Part shown: one piece after another, positions 5,701 to 51,620 of the stretch
Layout of the letters: every line of letters begins with the position of its first letter
Numbering within the stretch: the stretch's first letter is position 1
Origin: Octopus bimaculoides
Lineage: Eukaryota
Length of the DNA stretch: 63,741 nt
Direction of reading: 5' to 3'
NCBI RefSeq assembly: GCF_001194135.2
Contig: NC_068982.1
Location: 6,508,710 to 6,572,450, forward strand
The notes under the pieces: generated by a model
What the model was told of the DNA's origin: nothing
Database searches by the model: none
The model's input: only the letters and a program-made list of their open reading frames with translations
Translations under genes and position numbers: made by a program

Positions 5701-5766
5701 ATTGGCGTAGGGGTTAAGAGCACAGGCTACTAATCCCAAGATTCTGAGTTCGATTTCAAGGAGTGA

Positions 5767-5841
<75 letters not shown>

Positions 5842-6024
5842 CATCGAAAAATATCTTAGGAATGAGAACCCAGGTTTGAAATTTCCCCAAGACACCTGAA
5901 GAAGGCTGGAAGGTATATCAGCTGAAACGTTGTGTTAACAACAGACACGATGAGGACAAATATCTGTCGAATGTGAATAATGTAAATAATTTACATAATT
6001 CCTCATCTCTTAAATATAGAACTG
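5701..6024 (+). mobile_element. Family D: tRNA head, (AAT)n and hammerhead-containing tail
   Basis: TGGCGTAGGGG A-box, GAGTTCGATTTC B-box, (AAT)n at 5771-5838, hammerhead motif at 5891-5936, end CTTAAATATAGAACTGT. Confidence 0.85.
5891..5936 (+). ncRNA. Minimal type-I hammerhead ribozyme motif
   Basis: GACAC-CTGAAGA-A-GGCTG..CAGCT-GAAAC-GTT-GTGTT: CUGANGA and GAAA cores, stems I and II, palindromic AACGTT. Confidence 0.7.
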
Positions 6025-6479
6025 TATTATGAGATAATGTATGATTAATTATAAACAATGTGAATGAATAAGTGTTACGCTTGACACAGTTATCTGAATG
6101 CTAAGGGTTAGACTTTGATTTTTCTTGCTTTCCATTTTCTCAATATGCTTCCATAAAGCATATTGTCTAATGCTTTAAATTTTTCTACTTGTAGCCTTTA
6201 TTTTATCCATCATTTCTCAGTTATACTGAATATTCTTCTCAGAGAAATCCATTTCAAATCAACTTTCTCTCATGTTATCGTTTGTTTTTTTTTTCTTTTT
6301 TTATTACTCCAATGACTCTTTAATGGCCACATGAAAATCAAATAAGCATGAATTATTTTTTTAATCCAGAAATATAGATAAACAATTCTATCCATAGTTA
6401 AATCATTGTGTGTGCATGCACATGTGAGTATATATACATGTGTGTGTATGCATACACACACACACACAAATGAGCACCT

Positions 6480-10131: not shown

Positions 10132-10346
10132 TTTATTCCATTTTCTCATTGGTGACATAACAGGTTCAAATAACAGTTGCAATCAGACAGAAATCTTTTT
10201 TTTTTTTTTCCAAACAAAAAGAATTCAGCCTAATGATGCTCTTTAATGCTTTGGAGGTAAAATATCTATTAACAGGTTACCTTTACTTTGTATGACTAAT
10301 AGAAAGTCAGACCTGCTGCCTTTGATGCAAAAACCAGAATCTCTGA

Positions 10347-10657
10347 TATTATTTACATTTGATGGATATTTGTCCTCATCTTTTTTGTTGTTAACCCAAT
10401 GTTTCGGCTGATATACCCTCCAGCCTTCATCAGGTGTTTTGGGGAAATTTCGAAGTTGGGTTCTCATTCCTAAGGTATTTTTCAATGTTATTATTATTAT
10501 TAATTATCATTAATCAGGTCACTGCCTGGAATCAAACTCAGAAACTTGGGGTTAGTAGCCCGTGCTCTTAGCCACTATGACATACACCAAGTTAAAGACA
10601 AATATCCGTCAAATGTAAATAATGTACATAATTCCTCATCTCTTAAATATAGAACTG
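10347..10657 (-). mobile_element. Family D, inverted architecture with 13-bp TSD
   Basis: minus-strand head, AAT and hammerhead unit (10347-10583) plus a plus-strand terminal ~70 bp; flanked by CAGAATCTCTGAT and CAGAATCTATGAT. Confidence 0.85.
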
Positions 10658-10723
10658 CAGAATCTATGATGTTTGAAATCCCAATTTCTGAAGACTGTTT
10701 TAAAATAGTATTTCTATATATAT

Positions 10724-23051: not shown

Positions 23052-23168
23052 CACTTACAGCACCCAGGTTTTCCAAGCGGTCACCCATCTAAGTATTCAG
23101 TAGGCTCGACATTGCTTAACTTCGGTGATCGGACAAGAACTGGTGCTCTCAACGTGATATGGCCGTAA

Positions 23169-23170
<2 letters not shown>
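23052..23170 (-). pseudogene. 5S rRNA copy, near full length and diverged
   Basis: minus strand CTTACGGCCATATCACGTTGAGAGCACCAGTTCTTGTCCGATCACCGAAGTTAAGCAATGTCGAGCC..AGATGGGTGACCGCTTGG..GGTGCTGTAAG matches the metazoan 5S layout; solitary, with several substitutions. Confidence 0.9.
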
Positions 23171-23220
<50 letters not shown>

Positions 23221-23224
23221 CACC

Positions 23225-23255
<31 letters not shown>

Positions 23256-24532
23256 GCATACATATTTATATGTGTGCAGATTATTTAAATCACTTACAAT
23301 CTTCCTGTAAATTGCTAGAATCATTTTTATTTTAGATTGACAGGAATGGAAAAGAGAAAACTTATATTATTTTTTATTTTATTTCACTTCAATTTTTCCT
23401 GACTTTTACTGATGATCAACCAGATTATTGTAAGTAAACCATCCTGAAAATTGCCTTTATACTCTTCTTTGAGAATAATTTCATCCGTTACATATTGTCT
23501 TATTCTTAAGAACCATACTTTGTAACATCATACATTAATTGGCATCGTTTCTTGATATGCAGTTTAGTGATTGAGTAACAGGATAAAATAGGGTGATAAT
23601 TTGTTGAATTTCATTGCTAATTTACTAATTGACAAAGCAAAAGTTGATAAAATTTACTGAATAAATACTGTTTGGATTGAATAAACTTTTTCTTCTCTGC
23701 AACAATAGATCGATAACTAAGCAACACTAATATTTGCCACAAAGTTACTCAATTTAGTAACTTTTATGAGATTAACTTGGTGACAATTGCATTAAAAGAA
23801 CCTTGGTTATAAATGCATTGGAATAACATAATGTATACAATTGGCTTATGAAATGGAAAGATTGTCTGCATACAGTTCCCATATTGTAGAGAGGTAAAAT
23901 TACAAGGCTGTAAAACTTGTATAGTTAATGATAGCTGTTGCCTTTGATGAGCTGGTAATGTATCACTGTTCCTACTTTATAGGTCATGAAATTTTATCTC
24001 ATCTCTGACGGTCTATTCATGGAACTACGTAGTTATATTTAATTATAAGTCTTGCAACTGGATAATTGAACATTGGTCATGTCTGTAAAAAAAAAAAAAA
24101 AAAAATCTATTATTATCCTCAGTTTGTAAATGATAACAATCATTGGTGACCCAAACTGCAAAGTACATCAAAATCAATCACCGTGTATCACATGGTGATG
24201 TTCCATATTTAACTAAGGCACCAATTTCTCATTGTCAATCCCTTTCATAAATCTGATTGATTTAAAGCCAATACAAGAATTTCGTCATAGACAAGTGATA
24301 TATTGATCTACAGAAATCAATCAACTTCTCACTTCTTTACACAACTTGACCATCCAATCTCTCAGAAAATAGCAAAATCTTCCTCAAATTACACTCCACA
24401 ATCTTATAATAGAAAGAACACATTAGACGATGACACTGTCTGGTAAAAGATAGGTGGTCATGGCCAGAAAGCCTTTGGACATTGTTCTACCCATGCAGAG
24501 TTGGCCTGGGGCTAATTAACACCTCATCCCTC

Positions 24533-30420: not shown

Positions 30421-30889
30421 GTTTGGAAATTTATATGCTGTGGAAGGAAATGTTACAGCAGTGAATAAAGACAAGAAATACAGGACTGCAGTGAATGATG
30501 GATTAGAAATGTGATCACAACACTTTCAACTTTTAAAAGCTCGAATAAATTCAAGGAACATATTTACATTTGATGGATATTTGTCCTCATCTTGTCTGTT
30601 GTTAACACGTTTCGGCTGAAATACCCTCCAGACTTCATCGGATATGAGTAGCATATGTGAACCAGTATTAAAGAAGGATAGGAAAATATTAGACTTATAA
30701 ACCCTAAAATTCACTCCGTAATTGCCCATGGGCATATAGCGTAGAGGTTAAGAGTGCAGGCTACTAACCCCAAGATTCCGAGTTCGATTCCAAACAGTGA
30801 CCTGAATAATAACAATAATAATAATAATAATAACAACAACATCGGGGAAATATCTTAGGAATGAGAACCCAGGTTCGAAATTTCCCCAG

Positions 30890-30935
30890 GACACCTGATG
30901 AAGACTGGAGGGTATATCAGCCGAAACGTTGTGTT
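30890..30935 (+). ncRNA. Minimal type-I hammerhead ribozyme motif
   Basis: GACAC-CTGATGA-A-GACTG-GAGGGTATAT-CAGCC-GAAAC-GTT-GTGTT; all core nucleotides intact, one stem II mismatch. Confidence 0.8.
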
Positions 30936-31176
30936 AGCAACAAACGAGATGAGGACAAATATCTGCCAAATGTAAATAATGTACATACAGGGGTTGGACA
31001 AAATAATGGAAACACCTAGTATCATAGCATCATAATTTTGAAATATCTATAAAACCATCAAAAGTTTGTTTATTTTTATGTTTTTTGATTTATTATTAGT
31101 GTTGCTTAATACGTTTTGCTAAAATTGCTGTTTCTTTTAAGATGTCATCAGAAAATGGTAATTAAAATTCATTAAA

Positions 31177-32200
31177 ATGACAGATTTATCGAACTTTCAA
31201 AGAGGTCAAATTGTTAGTGCTCGTATGGCAGGCGCTAGTGTAACAAAAACAGCCAAAATGTTTGGTGTATCAAGAAGTACTGTCTCAAAAGTAATGACAG
31301 CTTTTGAGAAAGAGGGAAAACCTTCTTGTCGACACAAAACTCCGGAAGAAAACCCAAGCTTTCAGATAGGGACCATCAGACTCTTACATGAATTGTTAGA
31401 AAGGATCACAAAAGTACAGCTCCCAAAATCACTGCAAAGCTTAATGACCACCTCGAGAGCCCAGTTTCCACAAAAACTGTCTGCTGGAAGCTGCACAAAG
31501 CTGGATTTCACAGGAGGGCTGCAATCAGAAAACCACTACTTTCAAAAACAAACATTGCAAAGCATTTAGAGTGGAGTAAAAGCCTACAGAATTGGTCCCT
31601 AGAGAAGTGGAAGAATGTTATTTTCTTGAACAAGTCATCCTTTACCCTATTTCCAACCACTGGCCAAGTATACATGTAGAGACATCCAGAAGAAGCATTT
31701 GATCCAGACTCTAGTCTTCTAAGTGTTAAACATGGAGGAGGATCTGTAATGATCTGGGGGGCTGTATCTTGGAAATCCACAGGGCCAATGGTTTTCCTTC
31801 ATGGCAGAATTAATAGTCAAGACTGTTTAAGCATTTTATCTAATCAAATTCATTCTATGGTTGTAGAACTGAGGGTAACACAATCTTTCAGTATGATAAT
31901 GCACCAATTCACACAGCTAAAGTTGGTATTGAATGGCACGAGGAACATTCTAGTGAAGTTGAACATCTTATCTGGCCACCACAGTCCCCAGATCTCAATA
32001 TTATTGAACATTTATGGTGCATTTTAGAAAAAACAAGTAAGGAGTCGATATCCTCCACCATCATCACTACAAGAACTGGAGACTGTTTTAGATGAAGAAT
32101 GGACAACAATTCCTTCGGAAACAATTCAAACTTTGAGCAAGTCCATACCTCATAGGAATTCAAGCTGTAATTACTGCCAAAGATGGTTCTACCCCATATT
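31177..32200 (+). pseudogene. Tc1 DD34E transposase, frameshifted
   Basis: HTH MTDLSNFQRGQIV..VSRSTVSKV; VKHGGGSVMIWGA; DNAPIH..WPPQSPDLNIIEHLW, spread over several frames. Confidence 0.95.
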
Positions 32201-32618
32201 ACTCTTTTACTTTTTTAACTTGTTTCAGTCATTTGACTGTGGCCATGCTGGAGCACCGCCTTTAGTCGAGCAAATCGACCCCAGGACTTATTCTTTGTAA
32301 GCCTAGTACTTATTCTATCGGGGTCTTTTGCCAAACTGCTAAGTTACAGGGACGTAAACACACCACAATTAGTTGTCAAGCAATGTTTGGGGGGACAAAC
32401 ATATACACACATATACACACATATACACATATATATATATATACATATATATGATGGGCTTCTGTCAGCTTCCAACTACCAAATCCATTCACAACACTTT
32501 GGTCGGCCCGAGGCTGTAGTAGAAGACACTTGCCCAAGGGTGCCACGTAGTGGAACTGAACCCGGAACCATGTGGTTGGTAAGCAAGCTACTTACCACAC
32601 AGCTACTCCTGCGCCTAT
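32201..32618 (-). mobile_element. SINE family A inserted in the Tc1
   Basis: full-length copy flanked by ATATT on both sides. Confidence 0.92.
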
Positions 32619-33164
32619 ATTAAAATTAATTTATTTGAAATCTTAAGGTGTTTCCATTATTTTGTCCAACCCCTGTAATTCCTCATCTCTCAAATATAGA
32701 ATTGAAACTTAAGGAAGGTTGGCTGCTATTATTTTCAGTTTGGGCATCAGCAATGGAGACCTATGTCATTAATGACTATAATTTGTTGAAGACCTAACGA
32801 TATATTTAGAATAGAGCTGGAGATGGTTTTGCTATATCAAAGGAAGTTTTCATATTAGTAATATGATATTACCGAATTACAATAGGAACATTCACATTTC
32901 TCATTTCCTGTCTTTTCCAGTTACCATGGTTACTGTATTCAGAAATCACTTTATACCAAGAGTGAAAAGTTATAACCTGTCATTGTTTAGCTTCTCAAAT
33001 GCTTAAAAGAAAAGATTTTGAGATCATAGATTGTGAACCAACTGTTATTTCATGTGTTTTTGATTTTATATTTTTGTATTTAAGCAGGGAGAAGGCACTA
33101 TGAAAAAAAAAACAAAAAAAAACAGAAAAAGAAAGCGTAAAGAAATTCAAGAAATCTCAGTATC

Positions 33165-34289: not shown

Positions 34290-34503
34290 CTACTATTTTC
34301 TGACCAATTCTGATTCTGTAGTACAAATGTCTTGTTTTCATAAGTTTTGAATTAAAATCTTCGACCAAACATTAGTCACAATTTATGTTCTTAACAATAG
34401 CTGAGTGATAACTAAGTTAATTTACTAAATTCTTTGTTATATTTAAAATTAATTGAAAGAAACATAGAGCATCCCAACAGATGTGTGGTAATGAAAGGGT
34501 TAA
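34290..34503. mobile_element. TTAA MITE family 1, lacking its left end
   Basis: body matches 40217-40437; ends GAAAGGG-TTAA. Confidence 0.8.
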
Positions 34504-34530
34504 AATATATAATAGAGAAACAATTCTTAA

Positions 34531-35088
34531 CCCTTTTGATACCAACCCAGCTGAAACCGGCTCTGGCTCAGAGAACAAATGTCTTGTTTTCATAAATTTT
34601 GAATTAAAATCTTCCACCAAACATTAGTCACAATTTATGTTCTTAACACTAGCTGAATGATAATTAAGTTACATTATGTACATTTGACAGATATTTGTCC
34701 TCATCTTGTTTGTTGTTAACACTTTCAGCTGATATATCTTCCAGCCTTCATCAGGTGTCTTGGGGAAATTTCAAACCTTGGTTCTCACTCTTAAGGTATT
34801 TTTTGATGTTATTGTTATTATTATTATTCAGGTCAATGCCTGGAATCGAACTCAGAATCTTGGGGTTAGTAGCCTGTTCTCTTAACCACAACACCATATG
34901 CCAATGGGCATCTTGTTAGCAATAAACAAGATGAAGACAAATATCCATCAAATGTGAATAATGTACATAACTCTTCATCTCTTAAATATAGAACTGATAA
35001 CTAAGTTATTTTACTAAATTCTTTGTTATATTTAAAGTAATTGAAAGAAACACAGAGCATCTAAAAAAAAATACAGGAAACGAAAGGG
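34531..35088. mobile_element. TTAA MITE family 1, interrupted by family D
   Basis: TTAA-CCCTTTTGATAC ... AACGAAAGGG-TTAA. Confidence 0.85.
34672..34995 (-). mobile_element. Family D, inverted architecture with 13-bp TSD
   Basis: flanked by GATAATTAAGTTA (34659-34671) and GATAACTAAGTTA (34996-35008); the motif occurs once in the neighbouring empty MITE copy. Confidence 0.9.
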
Positions 35089-35764
35089 TTAAGGGAAGTG
35101 ACTCCTCCAAAACTAACAAAATAGCTTTGTAAATATAAGAGAATTGAAATTAGCTTTTATCAGTCAGACAGCCAAAATCAAGTTGTTAAAGTGATTGTTA
35201 ATGCTTTCTGAAGATGTTTTTAATTTGTTCTTGTCTAAATTGCAGTAAAAAAAAAAAAAAGAAAACAGTAAATGATAATAATCTGACTTTTCTGCTTACT
35301 CTGTTTTTTTTTTTACCATTATTTTTTAATGATTGTTATTATGCTGTAGAAAAAGTAGTTGCTAATGTTTAGATCTTACTTCATTCACTTTGATTCAAAA
35401 TTGTTTTCTAAACGTAAAATCGTTATAACAGTGTTTCCATTAATTTCACAGCTATAAGAAATGTAATACTAATTTTCTTGTTTTTATTATTTATTTATTT
35501 CTTGTGATACATTTCTTTTTCAAAATTTTGATGCTGACTTGACAAATTTCATGGATAAATCTTGATAAGATTTGCATTAGTTTATTCTGAGACAGTAATC
35601 AAACTGCTGTACAGTAGAATTACATTGCTAGAGTCGTTCAAGATTACTCAGTAACCAATTCAACAGGACATAATTAGAAGAAACTGTATTGAATTCTTAA
35701 ATATTTATGTGATGATCATTATGTGGTTTACAACTTTCTTTCAATCGTAGGGAAATATTAATGT

Positions 35765-36310
35765 ATTTACATTATTTACATTTGACAGATATTTGTCCTC
35801 ATCTTGTTTGTTGTTAACACAACGTTTCAGCTGATATACCCTCCAGCCTTCATCAGGTGTCTTGGGGAAATTTCGAACCTGGGTTCTCATTATTATTTTA
35901 CAAATAATAATAATGATAATAATAATAATAAGGGGCTGAAAATGTGAAACACATAGGGGCTGAAATAAGGGTGGAGCACTTGCAGAAAACAGCACTGCTT
36001 GGAACCACTCTAATACTCCGGAAGGTGCTCGAAAAATAAGAGGTGTTACTTTATTTCAGTGGTAGTGAACAGCTGACATCGTAGTACATCTCCAGTGTAA
36101 GAAGTTGTGCAAAGCAATGATGATAATAATAATAATAACATCGAAAAATACCTTAAGAATAAGAACCCAGGTTCGAAATTTCCCCAAGACACCTGATGAA
36201 GGCTGGAGGGTACATCAGCCAAAACGTTGTGTTAACAACAAACAAGATGAGGACAAATATCCGTTAAATGTAAATAATCTACATAATTCTTCATCTCTTA
36301 AATATAGAAC
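35765..36310 (+). mobile_element. Family D inverted pair enclosing an R4/Dong fragment
   Basis: minus partial at 35765-35892 (hammerhead 35816-35861); plus part at 36120-36310 (hammerhead 36188-36233, GAAA mutated to AAAA). Confidence 0.85.
35931..36125 (+). mobile_element. R4/Dong-clade non-LTR retrotransposon 3' fragment
   Basis: KHIGAEIRVEHLQKTALLGTTLILRKVLEK* plus a short 3' UTR, flanked by (AAT)n. Confidence 0.8.
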
Positions 36311-37966
36311 TGTACTCCCTAAAATTTAATCTCTGATATTTTTGATTGGGGACAATGGAATAAGTCATTTATAGTATCTTTTTTTTTATTATTACTGTTA
36401 CAATCTACCTCTGTTTGCTATCTTTTTCTGTATTGGTGTATATTTATGATTCTTAAGACTTAGGAAGTTCATTATGAAACATAATTAGTTTTAAAGCAAA
36501 TTAGCAATAGAAATCTACTGGAAATAAATTTATGATTCATTTCTATATGAACTTTAATATAAGTACTCACCTTCTGTATACCAAAAGGAAAGACGTTAGA
36601 TAAATTTTAGTTACCTGCCAAACTAAATGATAGAAATTCTAAAATTGTCTTTGTAAAGTTTATTCAATATTGTGCACAAGAAACATTATCTAATCAATAA
36701 TGTATTCTTTTACAGTATTTTCTTTTGTATTTCTATTTTCTTTTTTTCTTTTTTCACAAAACAATGACATAAAAAATAAAATTGCAATGAGAAAGCTTTG
36801 ATTTCTTTGCAGAATAGAAAGTCATATGGACGTTTCTTGTATACGTTTCTGAATCTTGTATCCAGGCCAAATATTTTCTTTTATGTATGCCACTTCTAAT
36901 TCTAGAATGGAACATTTTTCTCTGTCATCAACATCCAAAATCGTGTGCAGATTTTGATTTCTCTGCTGATAGTATTCTATGTGCCAAAGATTAATTCTGA
37001 TCAGACATGCTTTGAGAAGGCTTGATATAACAATGACTATTCTTATGAATCATGGAAATTGAGCTCCAGGAGGAGCCTTGCAAGACACATTCGTTTCTCA
37101 ACGTAGATGCCATGCTGGATTTAATGAAACTGCTGAACCTGCCATGGGTAAGATCCAATGGTGAAAGCAGATTGTTTTGTGTTAGATGCATTACCTCATT
37201 TTATGTTGTGAGTTATTTCATGTGGAAACAGAATAAGATATGAAATGATGATGCTGAAGAGGAGAAAAAGAAATGGTGATAACAAGAAGAAGACAGTTAT
37301 CTTTAATTTAGAAACCAATAATTCATTTATTCCTTGCACTCTGTTCTAAGATATTTTGACATCACCCTCTTCCTTTTCATCCTATTTTCAATTATTCGCC
37401 ATATTCACCCTTCCCATTCTTGTTATTTCTCCTTAGATAAGAAGTCTGATCTTCCATGTGTAAAACTGCATTCATTGGTCTAGTACTCTTTCAGCTAATA
37501 TTAACACTTTTTACTCCAAGTGTGTTATTAGAGCATTTGAACGGCAAAGAAAATAATCCTCGTACAAATTATGCAATTAATATTAAATGGAAAGCAATAC
37601 TCGTATGTGTGCATGTCTGAAGAGAGTGATTGCTGTCTGTTGTTAATTTCCTGTTGTATTCTGGTGTTTATTTTGCTTTGTTTGTCACTTGCTGTGTCAT
37701 GCTGACTCTGCCTGAGAATTCATATAAAGGTAGAAGTTTCTGTGTCAGAATACTAAACCAATTATATGTTCATTCAATGAGCAGGTGATACAGCTGATCA
37801 AACAATGCAGCTGAAAAATCAGGGTCAGAGATTCTTAACTGGCCAAAACTTTGAAGTCACTGTCAACAGTATTCTTGTTTAAGAATAATAAATTTGTGCT
37901 CTACACAAATATATAATGCCTCAGATTAATGTAAAATTGTTTTTATAATTAAACATAATAACAAAT

Positions 37967-40166: not shown

Positions 40167-40216
40167 AATAAAAGCAGAATTTTAATCAACTAAAATGCCT
40201 TAGCTTGATACATTAA

Positions 40217-40437
40217 CCCTTTCGTTACCAACCTGTCTGAAACCGCCTCTGGCTCTGTAGTACAAATTTCTTGTTTTCAAAAGTTTTGAATTAAAATCTG
40301 CCACCAAACCTTACTCACAATTTATGTTCCTAACACTAGCTTAATAATAACAAAGTTATTTTACTAAATTCTTTGTTATATTCAAAGTAATTGAAAGGAA
40401 CAGAGAGCATCTTAACAGAAATATGTTAACGAAAGGG
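40217..40437. mobile_element. TTAA MITE family 1 (piggyBac-like), intact
   Basis: TTAA-CCCTTTCGTTA ... TAACGAAAGGG-TTAA; 11-bp TIR and TTAA TSD. Confidence 0.9.
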
Positions 40438-40821
40438 TTAAGTATATTGGCACTCATTTTTACTATTAAGTTTTCATTTCATTAGCACCCCAAGGTGTTT
40501 CCCTGTCATTTTACAAAACTCCAAGTTTTCTTTTCCCAGCTAATTTATTAATTACTTTACCCCAACACCCATCCATTCTAATCACATGAGGGTTTTATTA
40601 TACTTAAAAGAACCAGTGTAAATAGTGATTATTTAATGAAGACAATTGAAAAGACATCACTTTAAAAATGAGATTATTTGATTTACTCTCGCCAATGCAA
40701 GTCATTAATATTCAATTATCAAACTAAAAAGATATTTTATACTTCACAATTTATTATCCTCATCTAATTGCCTTATTATTATTATTACTATTATTATTAT
40801 TATTATCATTATTATTATTAT

Positions 40822-41035: not shown

Positions 41036-41257
41036 TGTTTAACAATTTTGAACAAAACACAAATGTTTCTAGGGGTGAATTATTCAAACCTCAAAGAATT
41101 CCTCTCAACACATGTCTATGATACTCCTCCACTAATTCTACTTGTGATCAGAGATGCACATATCATCAACCACCAAGGGACATGCTCAACTGGTTATGGT
41201 CAAACAACTGACAAGCAAATCTGTGGTATTGAGCAGAATATTATTAATATTATTATT

Positions 41258-41626
41258 GTCATTGCCTTTGCACAGCTTCTAACGCTCCAGATGTACTACG
41301 GTGCCAGCTGTTCACTACCAGTGAACTAAGGTAACACTTCTTATTTTTCGAGCACCTTCCAGAGTATTTAAGCAGTTCCAAGCAGTGCTGTTTTCTGCAA
41401 GTACTCCACCCTTATTGCAGCCCCTATTTGTTCCACATACTTCTCGAGATTTTTTCTCACTGTTCCCAGGGCTCCGACAATTATTGGTACTACTACCACC
41501 TTTTTCATCGACAACAACTGCTTAACTTCCCAAGCTAACCTGTCATATCTCTCGACTTTTCTTTCTTCCTTATCACATACCTTGTTGTCAGCTGGGCATG
41601 CTATATCTATGATCCAGCATAGTTTG

Positions 41627-41632
<6 letters not shown>
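41258..41632 (-). mobile_element. R4/Dong-clade non-LTR retrotransposon 3' fragment (restriction-like endonuclease domain)
   Basis: WIIDIACPAD..KVERYDRL..VVVPIIVGALGTV..LQKTALLGTA; same 3' UTR as 35931-36125; AAT/ATT tracts on both sides. Confidence 0.88.
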
Positions 41633-41683
<51 letters not shown>

Positions 41684-41692
41684 GTTATTAAC

Positions 41693-41897
41693 ATGCAGTG
41701 GGCTGGCACAAGTGTTAGCACACCTAGCAGTATTTTGTCTGTCTTTATGTTCTGAGTTCAAATTCCACCTAAGTCAACTTTGCCTTTCATCCTTTTGGGG
41801 CAGATGAATTAAGTACCAGTCGAGCAATGGGATCGAAGGAATCGATTAGTTCCATTCCCCAAAATTTAAGGCTCTGTACCTACAGCAGAAAGGATTA
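41693..41897 (+). mobile_element. SINE family B
   Basis: GTTCTGAGTTCAAATTCCAC..CTTTGCCTTTCATCC..AAGTACCAG, (ATT) tail. Confidence 0.8.
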
Positions 41898-46467: not shown

Positions 46468-46673
46468 ACAGTTCTATATTTAAGAGATGAGGAATTATGT
46501 ACATCATTTACATTTGACAGATATTTGTCCTCATCTTGTTTGTTGTTAATACAACATTTCGGCTGATACACCCTCCAGCCTTCATCAGGTGTCTTGGGGA
46601 AATTTCGAACCTGGGTTCTTATTCCTAAGGTATTTTTTGTTGTTACTATTATTATTATTATTCAGGTCACTGC
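46468..46673 (-). mobile_element. Family D with a truncated head
   Basis: complete 3' end, hammerhead at 46548-46593, AAT linker; stops at CAGGTCACTGC. Confidence 0.85.
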
Positions 46674-46758
46674 ATGGTGTAGGTGTATAACATGGTGTAG
46701 ATGTACCACATGGTGTAGATGTATCACATGGTGTAGGTGTATGACATGGTGTAGATGT
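46673..46758. repeat. 18-bp tandem repeat, ~4.8 copies (CATGGTGTAGRTGTAYNA)
   Basis: direct reading. Confidence 0.9.
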
Positions 46759-46759
46759 T

Positions 46760-47091
46760 TGTTGGTGCAAGATAGCTATGTAGGTTTCTATGTTCTTGAA
46801 ATTCTCTTGTTTCCGAAGGTGGAATTGATAAGACTCATAAGCCACATGCGCCTCACCAACGAAAAATTCTTCGAATTTGTTAATCACTTCAGATCGGTCA
46901 TTTTTCTGTTCTTCATTGTCAAATTGTAGTCCTTCATATATATCAAAACATTCTTTTCCAATAGTCACCAGAAATACAGAAGTTTGAAATCCAGTATCGA
47001 CTTCATTTGAGAGTCGACTGGCAATTGAGTAATTCAATAAGTTTCGTTTAAATCTTCTCCAATTGCTAGCCACATTTCCTGATAAAGACAT
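46760..47091 (-). pseudogene. Ty3/gypsy gag N-terminal fragment
   Basis: LSGNVASNWRRFKR..SVFLVTIGKECFDIYE..KFEEFFV..YQFHLRKQ..ETYI matches the gypsy gag pattern; truncated. Confidence 0.85.
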
Positions 47092-47770: not shown

Positions 47771-47808
47771 GGGTTAGGGTTAGGGTTAGGGTTAGGGCTA
47801 GGGTTAGG
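47771..47808 (+). repeat. Interstitial (TTAGGG)n tract, ~6 units
   Basis: GGGTTAx4 GGGCTA GGGTTA GG. Confidence 0.9.
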
Positions 47809-50946: not shown

Positions 50947-51620
50947 TAAGGCAGCAAGCCGGACAAAATGCTCAGTGGCGTTTTGTCTGTTTTTACGTTC
51001 TGAGTTCAAATTCCGCCGAGGCCGATTTTGCCTTTCATCCTTTTTGCAGGGTCGATAAATTAAGTACCAGTTGCGTACTGAAGTCGATTTAATCGACTGG
51101 TCTCCTCCCCCAAAATTTCGGGCCTTTTGCCTAGAGTTGAAAAAAACATTTGTTTCTTACAAGGTGGCGAGCTGGCAGAAACGTTAGCACTCCGGGTGAA
51201 ATGCTCAGTGGTATTTCATCTGTCTTTACATTCTGAGTTCAAATTCCACTGAGGTCGACTTTGCCATTCGTCCTTTTGGGGTCAATGAAATAAGTACCAG
51301 TTATGCACTGGATCGATATAATTGACTATCCCATTTCCTCAAAAGTTTTCAAGGCCTTGTGCCTAGACTAGAAATAATTATTTATGGCGATTAAGGTAGC
51401 AAGCTGGCAGAATCGTTAGCACACTGGGGGAAATGCCTAGCGGTATTTCATCTGCCGCTACGTTCTGAGATCGAATTCCTCCAAGGTCATCTTTGCCTTT
51501 CATCCTTTTGGGGTCGATAAATTAAGTACCAGTTATGCACTGGGGTCAATGTAATTGACTTAATCCCTTTGTCCTTGTTTGTCCCCTTTATGTTTAGCCC
51601 CCTGTGAGCAATAAAGAAAT
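50947..51620 (+). mobile_element. Three tandem SINE family B copies
   Basis: heads near 50947, 51160 and 51392, each with TTCTGAG..AAATTC and ATAAATTAAGTACCAG; two tail subtypes. Confidence 0.9.

What the first reader, a model, noticed from the sequence alone, without database searches (positions are those of the whole stretch)
30731..30987. Family D: a tRNA-headed SINE-like element carrying a hammerhead ribozyme (candidate Penelope-dependent SINE or retrozyme)
Seen: a ~300-bp non-coding unit at 6 loci (5701, 10347, 30559, 34672, 35765-36310, 46468). It has a tRNA-like head with A box (TRGCGTAGNGG) and B box (GAGTTCGATTCC), an (AAT)n linker, then GACAC-CUGAUGA-A-GGCUG(loop)CAGCC-GAAAC-GUU-GUGUU. 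This gives both hammerhead cores, a 5-bp stem II, a 5-bp stem I (GACAC/GUGUU) and a predicted NUH site after GUU. Eight motif copies lie at 5891, 10393, ~30603, 30890, ~34718, 35816, 36188 and 46548. Established: Penelope-like elements carry minimal type-I hammerheads in their terminal repeats, and Schistosoma Sm-alpha and metazoan non-LTR retrozymes combine Pol III-like boxes with hammerheads. Inference: this is a Pol III-transcribed, self-cleaving non-autonomous element mobilised by a Penelope-type RT rather than a LINE. I do not recall it described in cephalopods, but could not check.
Basis: partly seen in the sequence, partly recalled or inferred. Interest (0 to 1): 0.9.

Follow-up and report, generated by a model that had tools for sequence, protein, structure and literature searches.

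The report
Octopus SINE with Penelope-type hammerhead tail
A roughly 330-bp mobile DNA family in an octopus genome joins a tRNA-like promoter head to a tail carrying the minimal hammerhead ribozyme typical of Penelope-like retrotransposons, and its insertion scars point to copying by Penelope-type machinery rather than a LINE; similar elements are known in flatworms and as animal retrozymes, so this is a new example, not a new principle.

Summary
Its consensus is a textbook Penelope-like-element (PLE) minimal type-I HHR: CUGAUGA, an extra A before G10.1-C11.1, a 5-bp helix II, GAAA, a palindromic C15.2/G16.2 with no loop III, a GUU site and a 5-bp helix I.

No copy in the window is fully intact: 5 of 8 are broken and there are no compensatory changes. 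Rfam hammerhead models do not hit it. The head has A and B boxes at exact tRNA spacing, but neither ARAGORN nor Rfam sees a tRNA.

Four of six loci are composites of a copy plus an adjacent inverted 5'-truncated partner arm, with a 22-33-bp terminal extension at one end only. Three are flanked by 12-15-bp target-site duplications, one confirmed by a paralogous empty site. This matches published PLE insertion architecture and shows that head and tail move as one unit.

There are no tandem copies, so nothing retrozyme-like here. No PLE lies in the window, so the partner is untested. The host is an Octopus. The closest precedents are schistosome Sm-alpha/Sj-alpha, the tRNA-derived HHR-bearing SINEs. 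Verdict: new member of a known kind, moderately interesting.

The parts
5703..6026 (+). Copy 1, simple insertion. Head 5703-5770 (5'-truncated by about 13 nt), (AAT)23 linker 5771-5839, tail to the long 3' end. HHR motif 5891-5936 has N7=A and a G.U at 10.1-11.1.
   Evidence: no convincing TSD
10350..10657 (.). Composite 2. A head-linker-tail arm lies on the minus strand (10350-10577; short 3' end at consensus position ~141; head truncated at ~19). An adjacent inverted 70-bp arm carries the long 3' end (10588-10657, +). HHR 10393-10438 (-) is broken (16.2 G>A, 1.2 U>G). The TSD CAGAATCTMTGATRT lies at 10335-10349 and 10658-10672.
30560..30639 (-). Composite 3, inverted 5'- and 3'-truncated partner arm (tail consensus 59-141). 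Its HHR remnant at about 30603-30646 is dead (U4>C and a deletion at the cleavage site).
30640..30722 (+). Composite 3, an 83-bp spacer of unknown origin between the partner arm and the head. It has no other copy in the window.
30724..30987 (+). Composite 3, the main arm and the finding's own interval. Head 30724-30804 (A box 30737-30747, B box 30780-30791), (AAT)n-type linker, then tail. HHR 30890-30935 has an intact core and one A.C mismatch in helix II. The arm is cut at 30987 by a Tc1/mariner insertion.
32678..32704 (+). Composite 3, the continuation of the tail (ATTCCTCATCTCTCAAATATAGAATTG) after the Tc1/mariner at 30988-32675. The composite's TSD AAAYTYAAGGAA lies at 30547-30558 and 32705-32716.
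34672..34996 (.). Composite 4. A full-length head-linker-tail arm lies on the minus strand (34672-34910; short 3' end at consensus ~152). An inverted 83-bp arm carries the long 3' end (34914-34996, +). HHR at about 34718-34759 (-) is dead (deletion of CGUU). The TSD TGATAAYTAAGTTA lies at 34658-34671 and 34995-35008. The composite sits in a piggyBac-like MITE, and the paralog at 40213-40442 shows the empty site.
35762..35891 (-). Composite 5, inverted partner arm (tail consensus 22-152). HHR 35816-35861 is the best-preserved copy, with only a G.U at 10.1-11.1.
36116..36314 (+). Composite 5, arm with the long 3' end. It is preceded by (AAT)n and a 180-bp 3' fragment of another repeat (35934-36115). 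HHR 36188-36233 is dead (G12>A).
46468..46677 (-). Copy 6, 5'-truncated inside the head (only GCAGTGACCTG is left), with linker, tail and the long 3' end. HHR 46548-46593 is degraded (C15.2>U, G1.3>A).

Best explanation
Family D is a composite non-autonomous retrotransposon (SINE) of an Octopus genome.

Anatomy:
- The 81-nt 5' module has Pol III type-2 promoter boxes: A box at +14 and B box at +58, 44 nt apart. It most likely drives transcription through an (AAU)n linker and a 174-nt 3' module. The unit contains no T4 terminator.
- The 3' module looks like a Penelope-like-element terminal (pLTR-type) sequence. It carries a minimal type-I hammerhead at tail consensus 52-97, with predicted cleavage after GUU92. 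It ends in a 9-bp hairpin (AGAUGAGGA/UCCUCAUCU).

Mobilisation. A PLE reverse transcriptase and GIY-YIG endonuclease supplied in trans recognises this tail and integrates the RNA by PLE-style target-primed reverse transcription. That leaves 12-15-bp target-site duplications. It often leaves a second, inverted, 5'-truncated arm primed 22-33 nt inside the 3' end, so the terminal extension is present at only one end of the insertion.

The hammerhead has no loop III. Its ACGU palindrome can form helix III only between two RNAs, so any cleavage needs dimers. Its role (transcript processing, or simply a passenger inherited from the PLE terminus) is unknown.

Shown here: the family, the motif, the box spacing, the composite architecture, the TSDs, the empty site, and co-insertion of head and tail.
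Inferred: Pol III transcription, the PLE enzyme as partner, the internal second priming, and any ribozyme activity.
For: - Family and motif are far above chance.
- Helices I and II are 93.9% paired over 8 copies, against 25-50% in shifted registers.
- Four of six loci are composites of two inverted arms. One end of each composite lacks the last 22-33 bp.
- Junction positions differ between composites. The head starts at position 1 in one and about 19 in another, and the arms are 70, 80 and 83 bp. They are therefore independent events.
- TSDs of 15, 12 and 14 bp enclose the whole composites. One is confirmed by a paralogous empty site at 40347-40358.
- This is the published PLE insertion pattern: an inverted 5'-truncated copy at the 5' end, a 30-40-bp one-sided 'tail', and variable TSDs (PMC8557442).
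- Dual min-HHRs 100-700 bp apart on opposite strands were noted for PLE-derived motifs (PMC4209133). Here the pairs are 286 and 369 bp apart.
- No head-only copy exists. Five of the six tails with an intact 5' end join head sequence.
- The 3' end has neither poly(A) nor a microsatellite.
- The translated tail matches only Octopus bimaculoides proteins. Octopus genomes carry active Penelope families and about 900 mostly unclassified SINE families (PMC13282606).
Against: - No autonomous PLE, and no RT or GIY-YIG motif, is in the window. A shared PLE tail is therefore unproven.
- Rfam hammerhead models give no hit even at E<=10 on the best copies. This is expected for a motif without helix III, but it is still a negative result.
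- There are no compensatory changes in helices I and II. Five of 8 copies have lost a core base or the cleavage-site register.
- The head is not recognised as a tRNA.
- Composite 3 has an 83-bp spacer, and composite 5 has a fragment of another repeat, between the arms. At least two templates therefore did not start at a Pol III start site in the head.
- No partial tandem (pLTR) arrangement is seen.
- There are only six loci, all from one 64-kb window.
Confidence: 0.6

Rival explanations
1. Family D is an ordinary LINE-dependent tRNA-SINE, with for example RTE or an R4/Dong-like LINE as partner. The inverted arms come from L1-style twin priming. The hammerhead-like motif is a captured or fortuitous passenger.
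For: - TSDs of 12-15 bp fit LINE target-primed reverse transcription equally well.
- The internal (AAT)n resembles the (TAA)n 3' end of another repeat in the window (41238-41757). The last bases of the head (AGGCAGTGAC) resemble that repeat's end (AGGCAATGAC).
- LINEs dominate octopus genomes.
Against: - D's 3' end has no poly(A) or microsatellite, and it has no similarity to any LINE-like 3' end in the window.
- In composite 3 the main arm is full length while the partner arm duplicates internal positions 59-141. In composites 2 and 4 the arms overlap by 36-59 bp. Twin priming on one RNA gives adjoining segments, not overlapping ones.
- Four of six loci being composite is far above twin-priming rates as I recall them; that figure is from memory and was not checked.
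- The motif carries four independent PLE-specific hallmarks.
Confidence: 0.12
2. Head and tail are separate elements. A PLE-derived tail unit (solo pLTR or truncated PLE) inserts preferentially into (AAT)n microsatellites, which happen to end an unrelated tRNA-SINE and a LINE-like repeat.
For: - PLEs show a microsatellite insertion bias (PMC8557442).
- Every intact tail 5' end abuts (AAT)n. In one locus the upstream partner is the 3' end of another repeat rather than the head.
Against: - In three loci the TSDs enclose the inverted arm, head, linker and tail as one insertion. One has an empty-site paralog. The tail-derived partner arm abuts the 5' end of the head, not the linker.
- No (AAT)n lies downstream of any tail.
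- No head-only copy exists in 64 kb.
Confidence: 0.08
3. Family D is a non-LTR retrozyme. It would propagate through hammerhead-processed circular RNA and rolling-circle reverse transcription, and the window merely shows monomeric remnants.
For: - Animal retrozymes are 150-400-bp AT-rich HHR repeats linked to PLEs. Many families have monomer copies (PMC7229834; bioRxiv 10.64898/2026.07.22.740005).
- The arm at 34914 starts within about 3 nt of the predicted cleavage site.
Against: - No head-to-tail tandem of D exists anywhere in the window.
- Copies have fixed 5' (head) and 3' termini rather than boundaries permuted around the cleavage site.
- Several arms span the cleavage site uncut.
Confidence: 0.07
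4. The hammerhead-like motif is a chance resemblance in an otherwise unremarkable repeat and has never been catalytic.
For: - There is no Rfam hit, no covariation and no intact copy in the window.
- ViennaRNA's lowest-energy dimer is not the hammerhead dimer.
Against: - The full descriptor was found in 0 of 200 simulated windows.
- The consensus has all the unselected hallmarks of PLE min-HHRs, including the extra base before 10.1 and the 15.2/16.2 palindrome.
- The motif sits in an element with PLE-type insertion scars.
Confidence: 0.05

Closest known systems
Sm-alpha / Sj-alpha SINE-like retroposons of Schistosoma
   Same: Both are short dispersed Pol III-type elements with a tRNA-related head (Sm-alpha derives from tRNA-Gln-TTG) and a type-I hammerhead downstream, at high copy number (PMC2770079).
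   Different: As I recall, Sm-alpha carries a canonical, efficient hammerhead with a helix III and loop-loop contacts. D has the minimal PLE variant with no loop III. The D head is not recognisable as a tRNA, and D has an (AAT)n linker. The phylum differs. Sequence homology was not tested, because no Sm-alpha sequence was available.
[quoted passage not shown] 2017)
   Same: Identical motif architecture: an extra nucleotide between 9 and 10.1, G10.1-C11.1, a palindromic 15.2-16.2, no loop III and a dimer requirement. They are often found dispersed, or as pairs on opposite strands 100-700 bp apart.
   Different: Here the carrier is not a truncated PLE. It is a unit with its own Pol III-type head, and no RT/EN ORF adjoins any copy in the window.
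Metazoan non-LTR retrozymes (coral, mussel, axolotl, Xenopus)
   Same: Both are non-coding, AT-rich HHR-bearing elements of about 150-400 bp, proposed to borrow PLE machinery.
   Different: Retrozymes are defined by tandem repeats and circular RNA. D is dispersed with fixed ends, shows no tandems here, and has a promoter head.
PLE insertion architecture (Evgen'ev & Arkhipova 2005; Craig et al. 2021)
   Same: An inverted 5'-truncated copy next to the 5' end, a short extension at one end only, variable TSDs and frequent 5' truncation.
   Different: No partial tandem or pLTR is seen. The extension is 22-33 bp rather than 30-40 bp. The element is non-autonomous.
Classical tRNA-SINE/LINE pairs (shared 3' tail model, Ohshima & Okada)
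   Same: A modular head-body-tail design in which the tail is presumably the recognition signal for a reverse transcriptase supplied in trans.
   Different: The tail looks PLE-derived rather than LINE-derived.

Membership tests
PLE-type minimal hammerhead (min-HHR) | Conserved core C3U4G5A6N7G8A9 ... G12A13A14, with A15.1-U16.1 and an H17 cleavage site | tested here: met
   The consensus CUGAUGA...GAAAC-GUU| passes the strict descriptor. The core is intact in 3 of 8 copies (5891, 30890, 35816). It is mutated or shifted in register in the other 5.
PLE-type minimal hammerhead (min-HHR) | Helices I and II base-paired | tested here: met
   Helix I is 5 bp (GACAC/GUGUU) and helix II is 5 bp (GGCUG/CAGCC). 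93.9% of cells are paired, against 25-50% in shifted registers. There are no compensatory changes, so there is no evolutionary support.
PLE-type minimal hammerhead (min-HHR) | Extra nucleotide between A9 and 10.1; G10.1-C11.1; palindromic 15.2-16.2 with no or a palindromic loop III | tested here: met
   The extra A is present in all 8 copies. The 10.1-11.1 pair is G-C in 5 copies and G.U in 3. 15.2-16.2 is C-G with zero loop, giving an ACGU palindrome. The criteria come from PMC4209133.
PLE-type minimal hammerhead (min-HHR) | Located in the terminal repeat of an element encoding a PLE RT and GIY-YIG EN (or sharing sequence with one) | not testable with these tools
   No PLE motif appears in the six-frame translation of the window. 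No other octopus DNA could be retrieved.
PLE-type minimal hammerhead (min-HHR) | Self-cleavage as a dimer | not testable with these tools
   This needs an in vitro transcription assay. The ViennaRNA cofold was uninformative.
Canonical type-I hammerhead (Rfam Hammerhead_1 and related models) | A match to the covariance model, including a closed helix III | tested here: not met
   No hammerhead family was reported at gathering score, nor at E<=10 on 30500-31050 and 35700-36360.
tRNA-derived SINE | Internal Pol III A and B boxes at tRNA spacing | tested here: met
   TGGCGTAGTGG is at +14 and AGTTCGATTCC at +58 of the head consensus, 44 nt apart. Both are present, with decay, in all four heads.
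tRNA-derived SINE | Head recognisable as a tRNA (cloverleaf or sequence) | tested here: not met
   ARAGORN finds nothing in the window. It also finds nothing in the head consensus down to a 70% threshold. There is no Rfam tRNA hit at E<=10. A resemblance to Ser/Thr-type tRNAs rests only on memory.
tRNA-derived SINE | Short, non-coding, dispersed, TSD-flanked, with frequent 5' truncation | tested here: met
   The unit is about 330 bp, at six loci, with TSDs of 12-15 bp in three of them and 5'-truncated copies present.
tRNA-derived SINE | 3' tail shared with an autonomous partner; Pol III transcription | not testable with these tools
   This needs the whole genome and expression data.
Non-LTR retrozyme | Head-to-tail tandem repeats, each with a type-I HHR | tested here: not met
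   TRF and self-BLAST find no tandem D copies in the window. Genome-wide status is unknown.
Non-LTR retrozyme | Expression as circular RNA | not testable with these tools
   No RNA data are available.
PLE-mobilised insertion | An inverted 5'-truncated copy abutting the 5' end, and a short extension at only one end | tested here: met
   The four composites are 10350-10657, 30560-32704, 34672-34996 and 35762-36314. In each, one arm ends at consensus ~141-152 and the other at 174. The criteria come from PMC8557442.
PLE-mobilised insertion | Partial tandem arrangement forming pseudo-LTRs | tested here: not met
   None is present in the window.
Sm-alpha / Sj-alpha | Sequence homology to the schistosome elements | not tested
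   No Sm-alpha sequence was available. Only the architecture was compared.

The most novel reading that the evidence does not exclude
Family D would be the first documented SINE in the strict sense (a Pol III tRNA-type head) whose retrotransposition partner is a Penelope-like element rather than a LINE, shown directly by PLE-type insertion scars. It could be one of many. Octopus genomes hold about 900 'unclassified' SINE families covering about 11% of the genome, so part of the octopus-specific SINE expansion may have been PLE-driven. In that reading the many 'orphan' dispersed minimal hammerheads of animal genomes ride on such SINEs. The ribozyme, active only when two SINE RNAs pair, could act as a concentration-dependent switch separating the promoter head from the RT-recognition tail.
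Probability: 0.35. Interest if true: 0.6.

Novelty: new member of a known kind. Interest (0 to 1): 0.45.

Why it matters
SINEs are defined in textbooks as LINE-dependent. A tRNA-headed SINE bearing Penelope-type insertion scars would give concrete structural evidence that PLE enzymes also mobilise Pol III transcripts in trans.

It would also explain what carries at least some of the thousands of dispersed minimal hammerheads reported in animal genomes. It would help to classify the large pool of unclassified octopus SINEs.

The composites are natural records of the poorly understood PLE integration reaction. They show a second, inverted priming event 22-33 nt inside the 3' end. Because the unit is only about 330 bp, it would make a convenient substrate for the in vitro PLE system that the field lacks.

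Practically, the element also contaminates gene models. One copy is annotated as the N-terminus of a dystrobrevin beta isoform.

Tried and rejected
1. Rfam at gathering score and at E<=10: no hammerhead or tRNA hit. I judged this uninformative for a helix-III-less motif, but it is recorded as a failed membership test for canonical hammerheads.
2. ARAGORN on the window, and on the head consensus at relaxed thresholds: nothing.
3. Covariation counts for helices I and II and for a 3'-terminal 9-bp hairpin: no significant support.
4. A search for a PLE in the window: Pfam on candidate ORFs and PLE motif regexes on the six-frame translation found none.
5. Fetching more copies or a partner PLE:
   - The translated tail used as a protein query found only two O. 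bimaculoides proteins. One gene range was too long to return DNA and the other was not on record.
   - Queries from another repeat's ORF and from the Tc1 transposase returned only loci of other organisms (L001-L004). These have no D copy and no similarity to the window.
   - Exact-pattern scans of metagenome contigs (two scans) and of prokaryotic genome contigs (one scan) found nothing.
   - A window-ORF look-up found nothing.
6. A literature search for D sequence strings returned 0 papers. [quoted passage not shown] 2021 (PMC8557442). Lunse 2017 and Ferbeyre 1998 are not held.
7. Classifying the (TAA)n-ended repeat at 41238-41757 as an R4/Dong LINE: no Pfam, NCBIfam or PDB support. This remains a lead from memory only.
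8. TSDs for copies 5703-6026, 46468-46677 and 35762-36314: none convincing.
9. ViennaRNA dimer folding did not return the hammerhead dimer as the lowest-energy structure.
10. Rejected: nested independent insertions as the origin of the composites. The TSDs enclose both arms, and the pattern recurs in four of six loci.
Full report
**What is there**

The window is AT-rich eukaryotic DNA (35% GC, 1258 N).

The full unit has three parts:
- an 81-nt head;
- an (AAT)n linker of 3 to 23 units;
- a 174-nt tail.

Full copies lie at 5703-6026 (+), 10350-10577 (-), 30724-30987 (+) and 34672-34910 (-). Tail-only pieces lie at 30560-30639 (-), 35762-35891 (-), 36116-36314 (+), 46468-46677 (-), 10588-10657 (+) and 34914-34996 (+). 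Copies differ from the local consensus by 1.5-10%.

- The family's real 3' end lies about 30 bp further on: ...ACATAATTCCTCATCTCTTAAATATAGAAC.
- The given interval ends at 30987 only because a Tc1/mariner sits inside the tail. This transposon spans 30988-32675 and has 32-bp perfect inverted repeats and a TA duplication. The tail resumes at 32678.

**The hammerhead**

The consensus reads GACAC-CUGAUGA-A-GGCUG-(GAGGGUAUAU)-CAGCC-GAAAC-GUU|GUGUU.

The core pattern with up to one mismatch occurs 11 times against 0.58 expected. A full descriptor requires both helices, the core, the 15.2/16.2 palindrome, U16.1 and H17. It never occurred in 200 simulated windows.

The motif has all four features that Cervera and de la Pena (2014, PMC4209133) list as unselected hallmarks of the minimal hammerheads of Penelope-like elements:
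- a G10.1-C11.1 pair;
- a palindromic 15.2-16.2;
- no loop III, so that helix III (ACGU) can form only between two molecules.

The caveats are real:
- Rfam's hammerhead models do not report it, even at E<=10 on the best copies.
- No copy in the window passes the strict descriptor. Two pass with a G.U at 10.1-11.1, and three pass with one helix mismatch.
- Five of eight copies have lost G12, U4, 16.2, 15.2 or the cleavage-site register.
- Helices I and II are 93.9% paired, against 25-50% in shifted registers. There is not one compensatory change.

The copies are decaying fossils. The ribozyme claim therefore rests on the consensus.

**The head**

TGGCGTAGTGG and AGTTCGATTCC fit the Pol III A-box and B-box consensus. 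They start 44 nt apart, exactly the tRNA spacing. The full-length 5' end lies 13 nt before the A box.

However, ARAGORN finds no tRNA in the window, nor in the head consensus at thresholds down to 70%. Rfam's tRNA model is silent.

'tRNA-like promoter head' is justified. 'tRNA-derived' is an inference. The unit has no T4 run, so a Pol III transcript could read through to the flank.

**How it was inserted**

This is the main new evidence. Four of the six loci are composites of two inverted arms.

| Composite | Main arm | Partner arm | Between the arms |
|---|---|---|---|
| 10350-10657 | head-to-tail, minus strand | 70-bp plus-strand tail arm | short gap |
| 34672-34996 | head-to-tail, minus strand | 83-bp plus-strand tail arm | short gap |
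| 30560-32704 | full plus-strand copy | 80-bp inverted arm | 83-bp spacer |
| 35762-36314 | 5'-truncated | 5'-truncated | (AAT)n and a fragment of another repeat |

In every composite one arm ends at tail position about 141-152. The other arm carries the last 22-33 bp.

Target-site duplications enclose three of the composites whole:
- CAGAATCTMTGATRT (15 bp);
- AAAYTYAAGGAA (12 bp);
- TGATAAYTAAGTTA (14 bp).

The third composite sits in a piggyBac-like MITE. The paralog of that MITE at 40213-40442 shows the uninterrupted site with a 12-bp overlap.

The junctions differ between composites in head start and arm length. They are therefore independent insertion events, not copies of one rearranged master.

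This is the architecture that Craig et al. (2021, PMC8557442) describe as characteristic of PLEs and not seen in LINE target-primed reverse transcription. It comprises heavy 5' truncation, an inverted 5'-truncated copy next to the 5' end, a 30-40-bp extension at only one end, and variable TSDs. Cervera and de la Pena also noted pairs of minimal hammerheads 100-700 bp apart on opposite strands. Here the pairs are 286 and 369 bp apart.

The overlapping arms do not fit L1-style twin priming on a single RNA. The overlap is 36-59 bp in two composites, and in composite 3 an internal segment is duplicated beside a full-length arm.

**Head and tail travel together**

In the window it fails:
- The partner arm, which is tail sequence, abuts the 5' end of the head.
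- The TSDs enclose head plus tail.
- No head-only copy exists.
- Five of the six tails with an intact 5' end are joined to head sequence.

The sixth tail (36116) follows (AAT)n and the 3' end of another repeat (35934-36115, paralog 41238-41438). Composite 3 carries an unexplained 83-bp spacer upstream of its head. These two cases suggest that whatever lies upstream of the tail can be carried along. On that reading the tail is the cis-acting mobilisation signal and the head supplies a promoter.

**What it is not**

There is no head-to-tail tandem of D in the window. Copies have fixed ends rather than ends permuted around the cleavage site. The retrozyme arrangement is therefore not met here.

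No autonomous PLE is present. No RT or GIY-YIG signal appeared in selected ORFs or in motif scans of all six frames.

**Host and wider sampling**

The open frame through the tail, used as a protein query, hit only two proteins, both from Octopus bimaculoides. One is a predicted dystrobrevin beta isoform whose N-terminus is an exonised D tail.

Every attempt to fetch more octopus DNA failed:
- gene range too long, or protein not on record;
- other TE queries returned loci from other organisms, without D;
- metagenome and prokaryotic genome scans were empty.

The partner PLE, the genome-wide head-tail linkage and subfamily covariation therefore remain untested.

**Comparison with what is known**

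- Hammerhead-bearing SINE-like retroposons derived from tRNA-Gln (Sm-alpha, Sj-alpha) have been known in Schistosoma for decades (PMC2770079).
- Minimal hammerheads in PLE terminal repeats, and thousands dispersed in animal genomes, were described in 2014 and reviewed in 2020 (PMC7761336).
- Non-LTR retrozymes are argued to be non-autonomous PLE partners (PMC7229834; bioRxiv 10.64898/2026.07.22.740005).
- Octopus genomes are rich in SINEs, about 11.6% of the genome and mostly unclassified. They also have recently active Penelope families (PMC13282606).
- No held paper links octopus SINEs to hammerheads or PLEs, and none contains D sequence strings.
- Repbase, Dfam and the 1994 octopus SINE sequences could not be checked.

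**Verdict**

Family D is best read as a PLE-dependent, tRNA-box-headed SINE carrying a PLE-type minimal hammerhead. It is a new member, in a cephalopod, of a kind already known from flatworm Sm-alpha elements and animal retrozymes.

Its most valuable feature is not the ribozyme, which is decayed and of unknown function here. It is the clean set of PLE-type insertion scars on a 330-bp non-autonomous unit.

Confidence in the overall model is about 0.6. Interest is moderate, at 0.45.

Noticed in passing
window 30988-32675: A Tc1/mariner transposon with 32-bp perfect terminal inverted repeats and a TA duplication is inserted inside the family-D tail. Its transposase is frameshifted, and the HTH domains are seen by Pfam. 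The closest proteins elsewhere are about 79% identical, on short ENA/Logan contigs.
   Followed up: partly
window 23052-23170 (-): A full-length 5S rRNA match (Rfam 84.9 bits) directly abuts an (AT)50 array at 23171-23271. It could be a gene, a pseudogene or the head of a 5S-derived SINE.
   Followed up: no
window 34527-35093, 40213-40442, 34309-34503: Copies of a piggyBac-like MITE (TTAACCCTTT...AAAGGGTTAA). One hosts a D composite, and another serves as its empty-site paralog.
   Followed up: partly
window 41238-41757 (-) and 35934-36115 (+): A repeat with a conserved C-terminal ORF (...IIDIACPADNKV...PIIVGALGTV...) ends in (TAA)n. Homologs about 70% identical occur in ENA assemblies of other organisms. 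There is no Pfam, NCBIfam or PDB match. From memory it resembles the restriction-like endonuclease end of R4/Dong-type LINEs. Its last bases resemble the end of the D head.
   Followed up: partly
protein P0002 (Octopus bimaculoides, GCA_001194135.2): The first ~33 residues of the predicted 'dystrobrevin beta isoform X1' are a translation of the D tail, including the hammerhead region. This is either an exonised SINE or an annotation artefact.
   Followed up: partly
window 47771-47808: An interstitial telomere-like repeat, (GGGTTA)6.
   Followed up: no
window 50986-51560: A 232-bp unit repeated 2.5 times in tandem. The unit looks like another SINE, with the B-box-like GAGTTCAAATTCC.
   Followed up: no
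window 46673-47091 (-): A gag-like ORF reads through an 18-bp tandem repeat (4.8 units) into the 5'-truncated D copy. The junction lies inside the D head remnant.
   Followed up: no
D tail consensus 109-117 / 152-160 (e.g. window 36244-36252 / 36287-36295): A 9-bp terminal hairpin, AGATGAGGA/TCCTCATCT, links the conserved box of the tail to the one-sided 3' extension. It is 92.6% paired. One G-C to A-U double change has a G.U intermediate, which is not statistically significant.
   Followed up: yes
window 34911-34916: The short arm of composite 4 begins within about 3 nt of the predicted hammerhead cleavage site (tail position 92|93), as a cDNA of a cleaved RNA would. The equivalent arm of composite 2 begins 15 nt downstream, and other arms span the site. 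With n=1 this is only suggestive.
   Followed up: partly
window 30640-30722: An 83-bp spacer between the inverted arm and the head of composite 3 has no other copy in the window and no explanation. It could be 5' transduction, template switching or filler DNA.
   Followed up: partly
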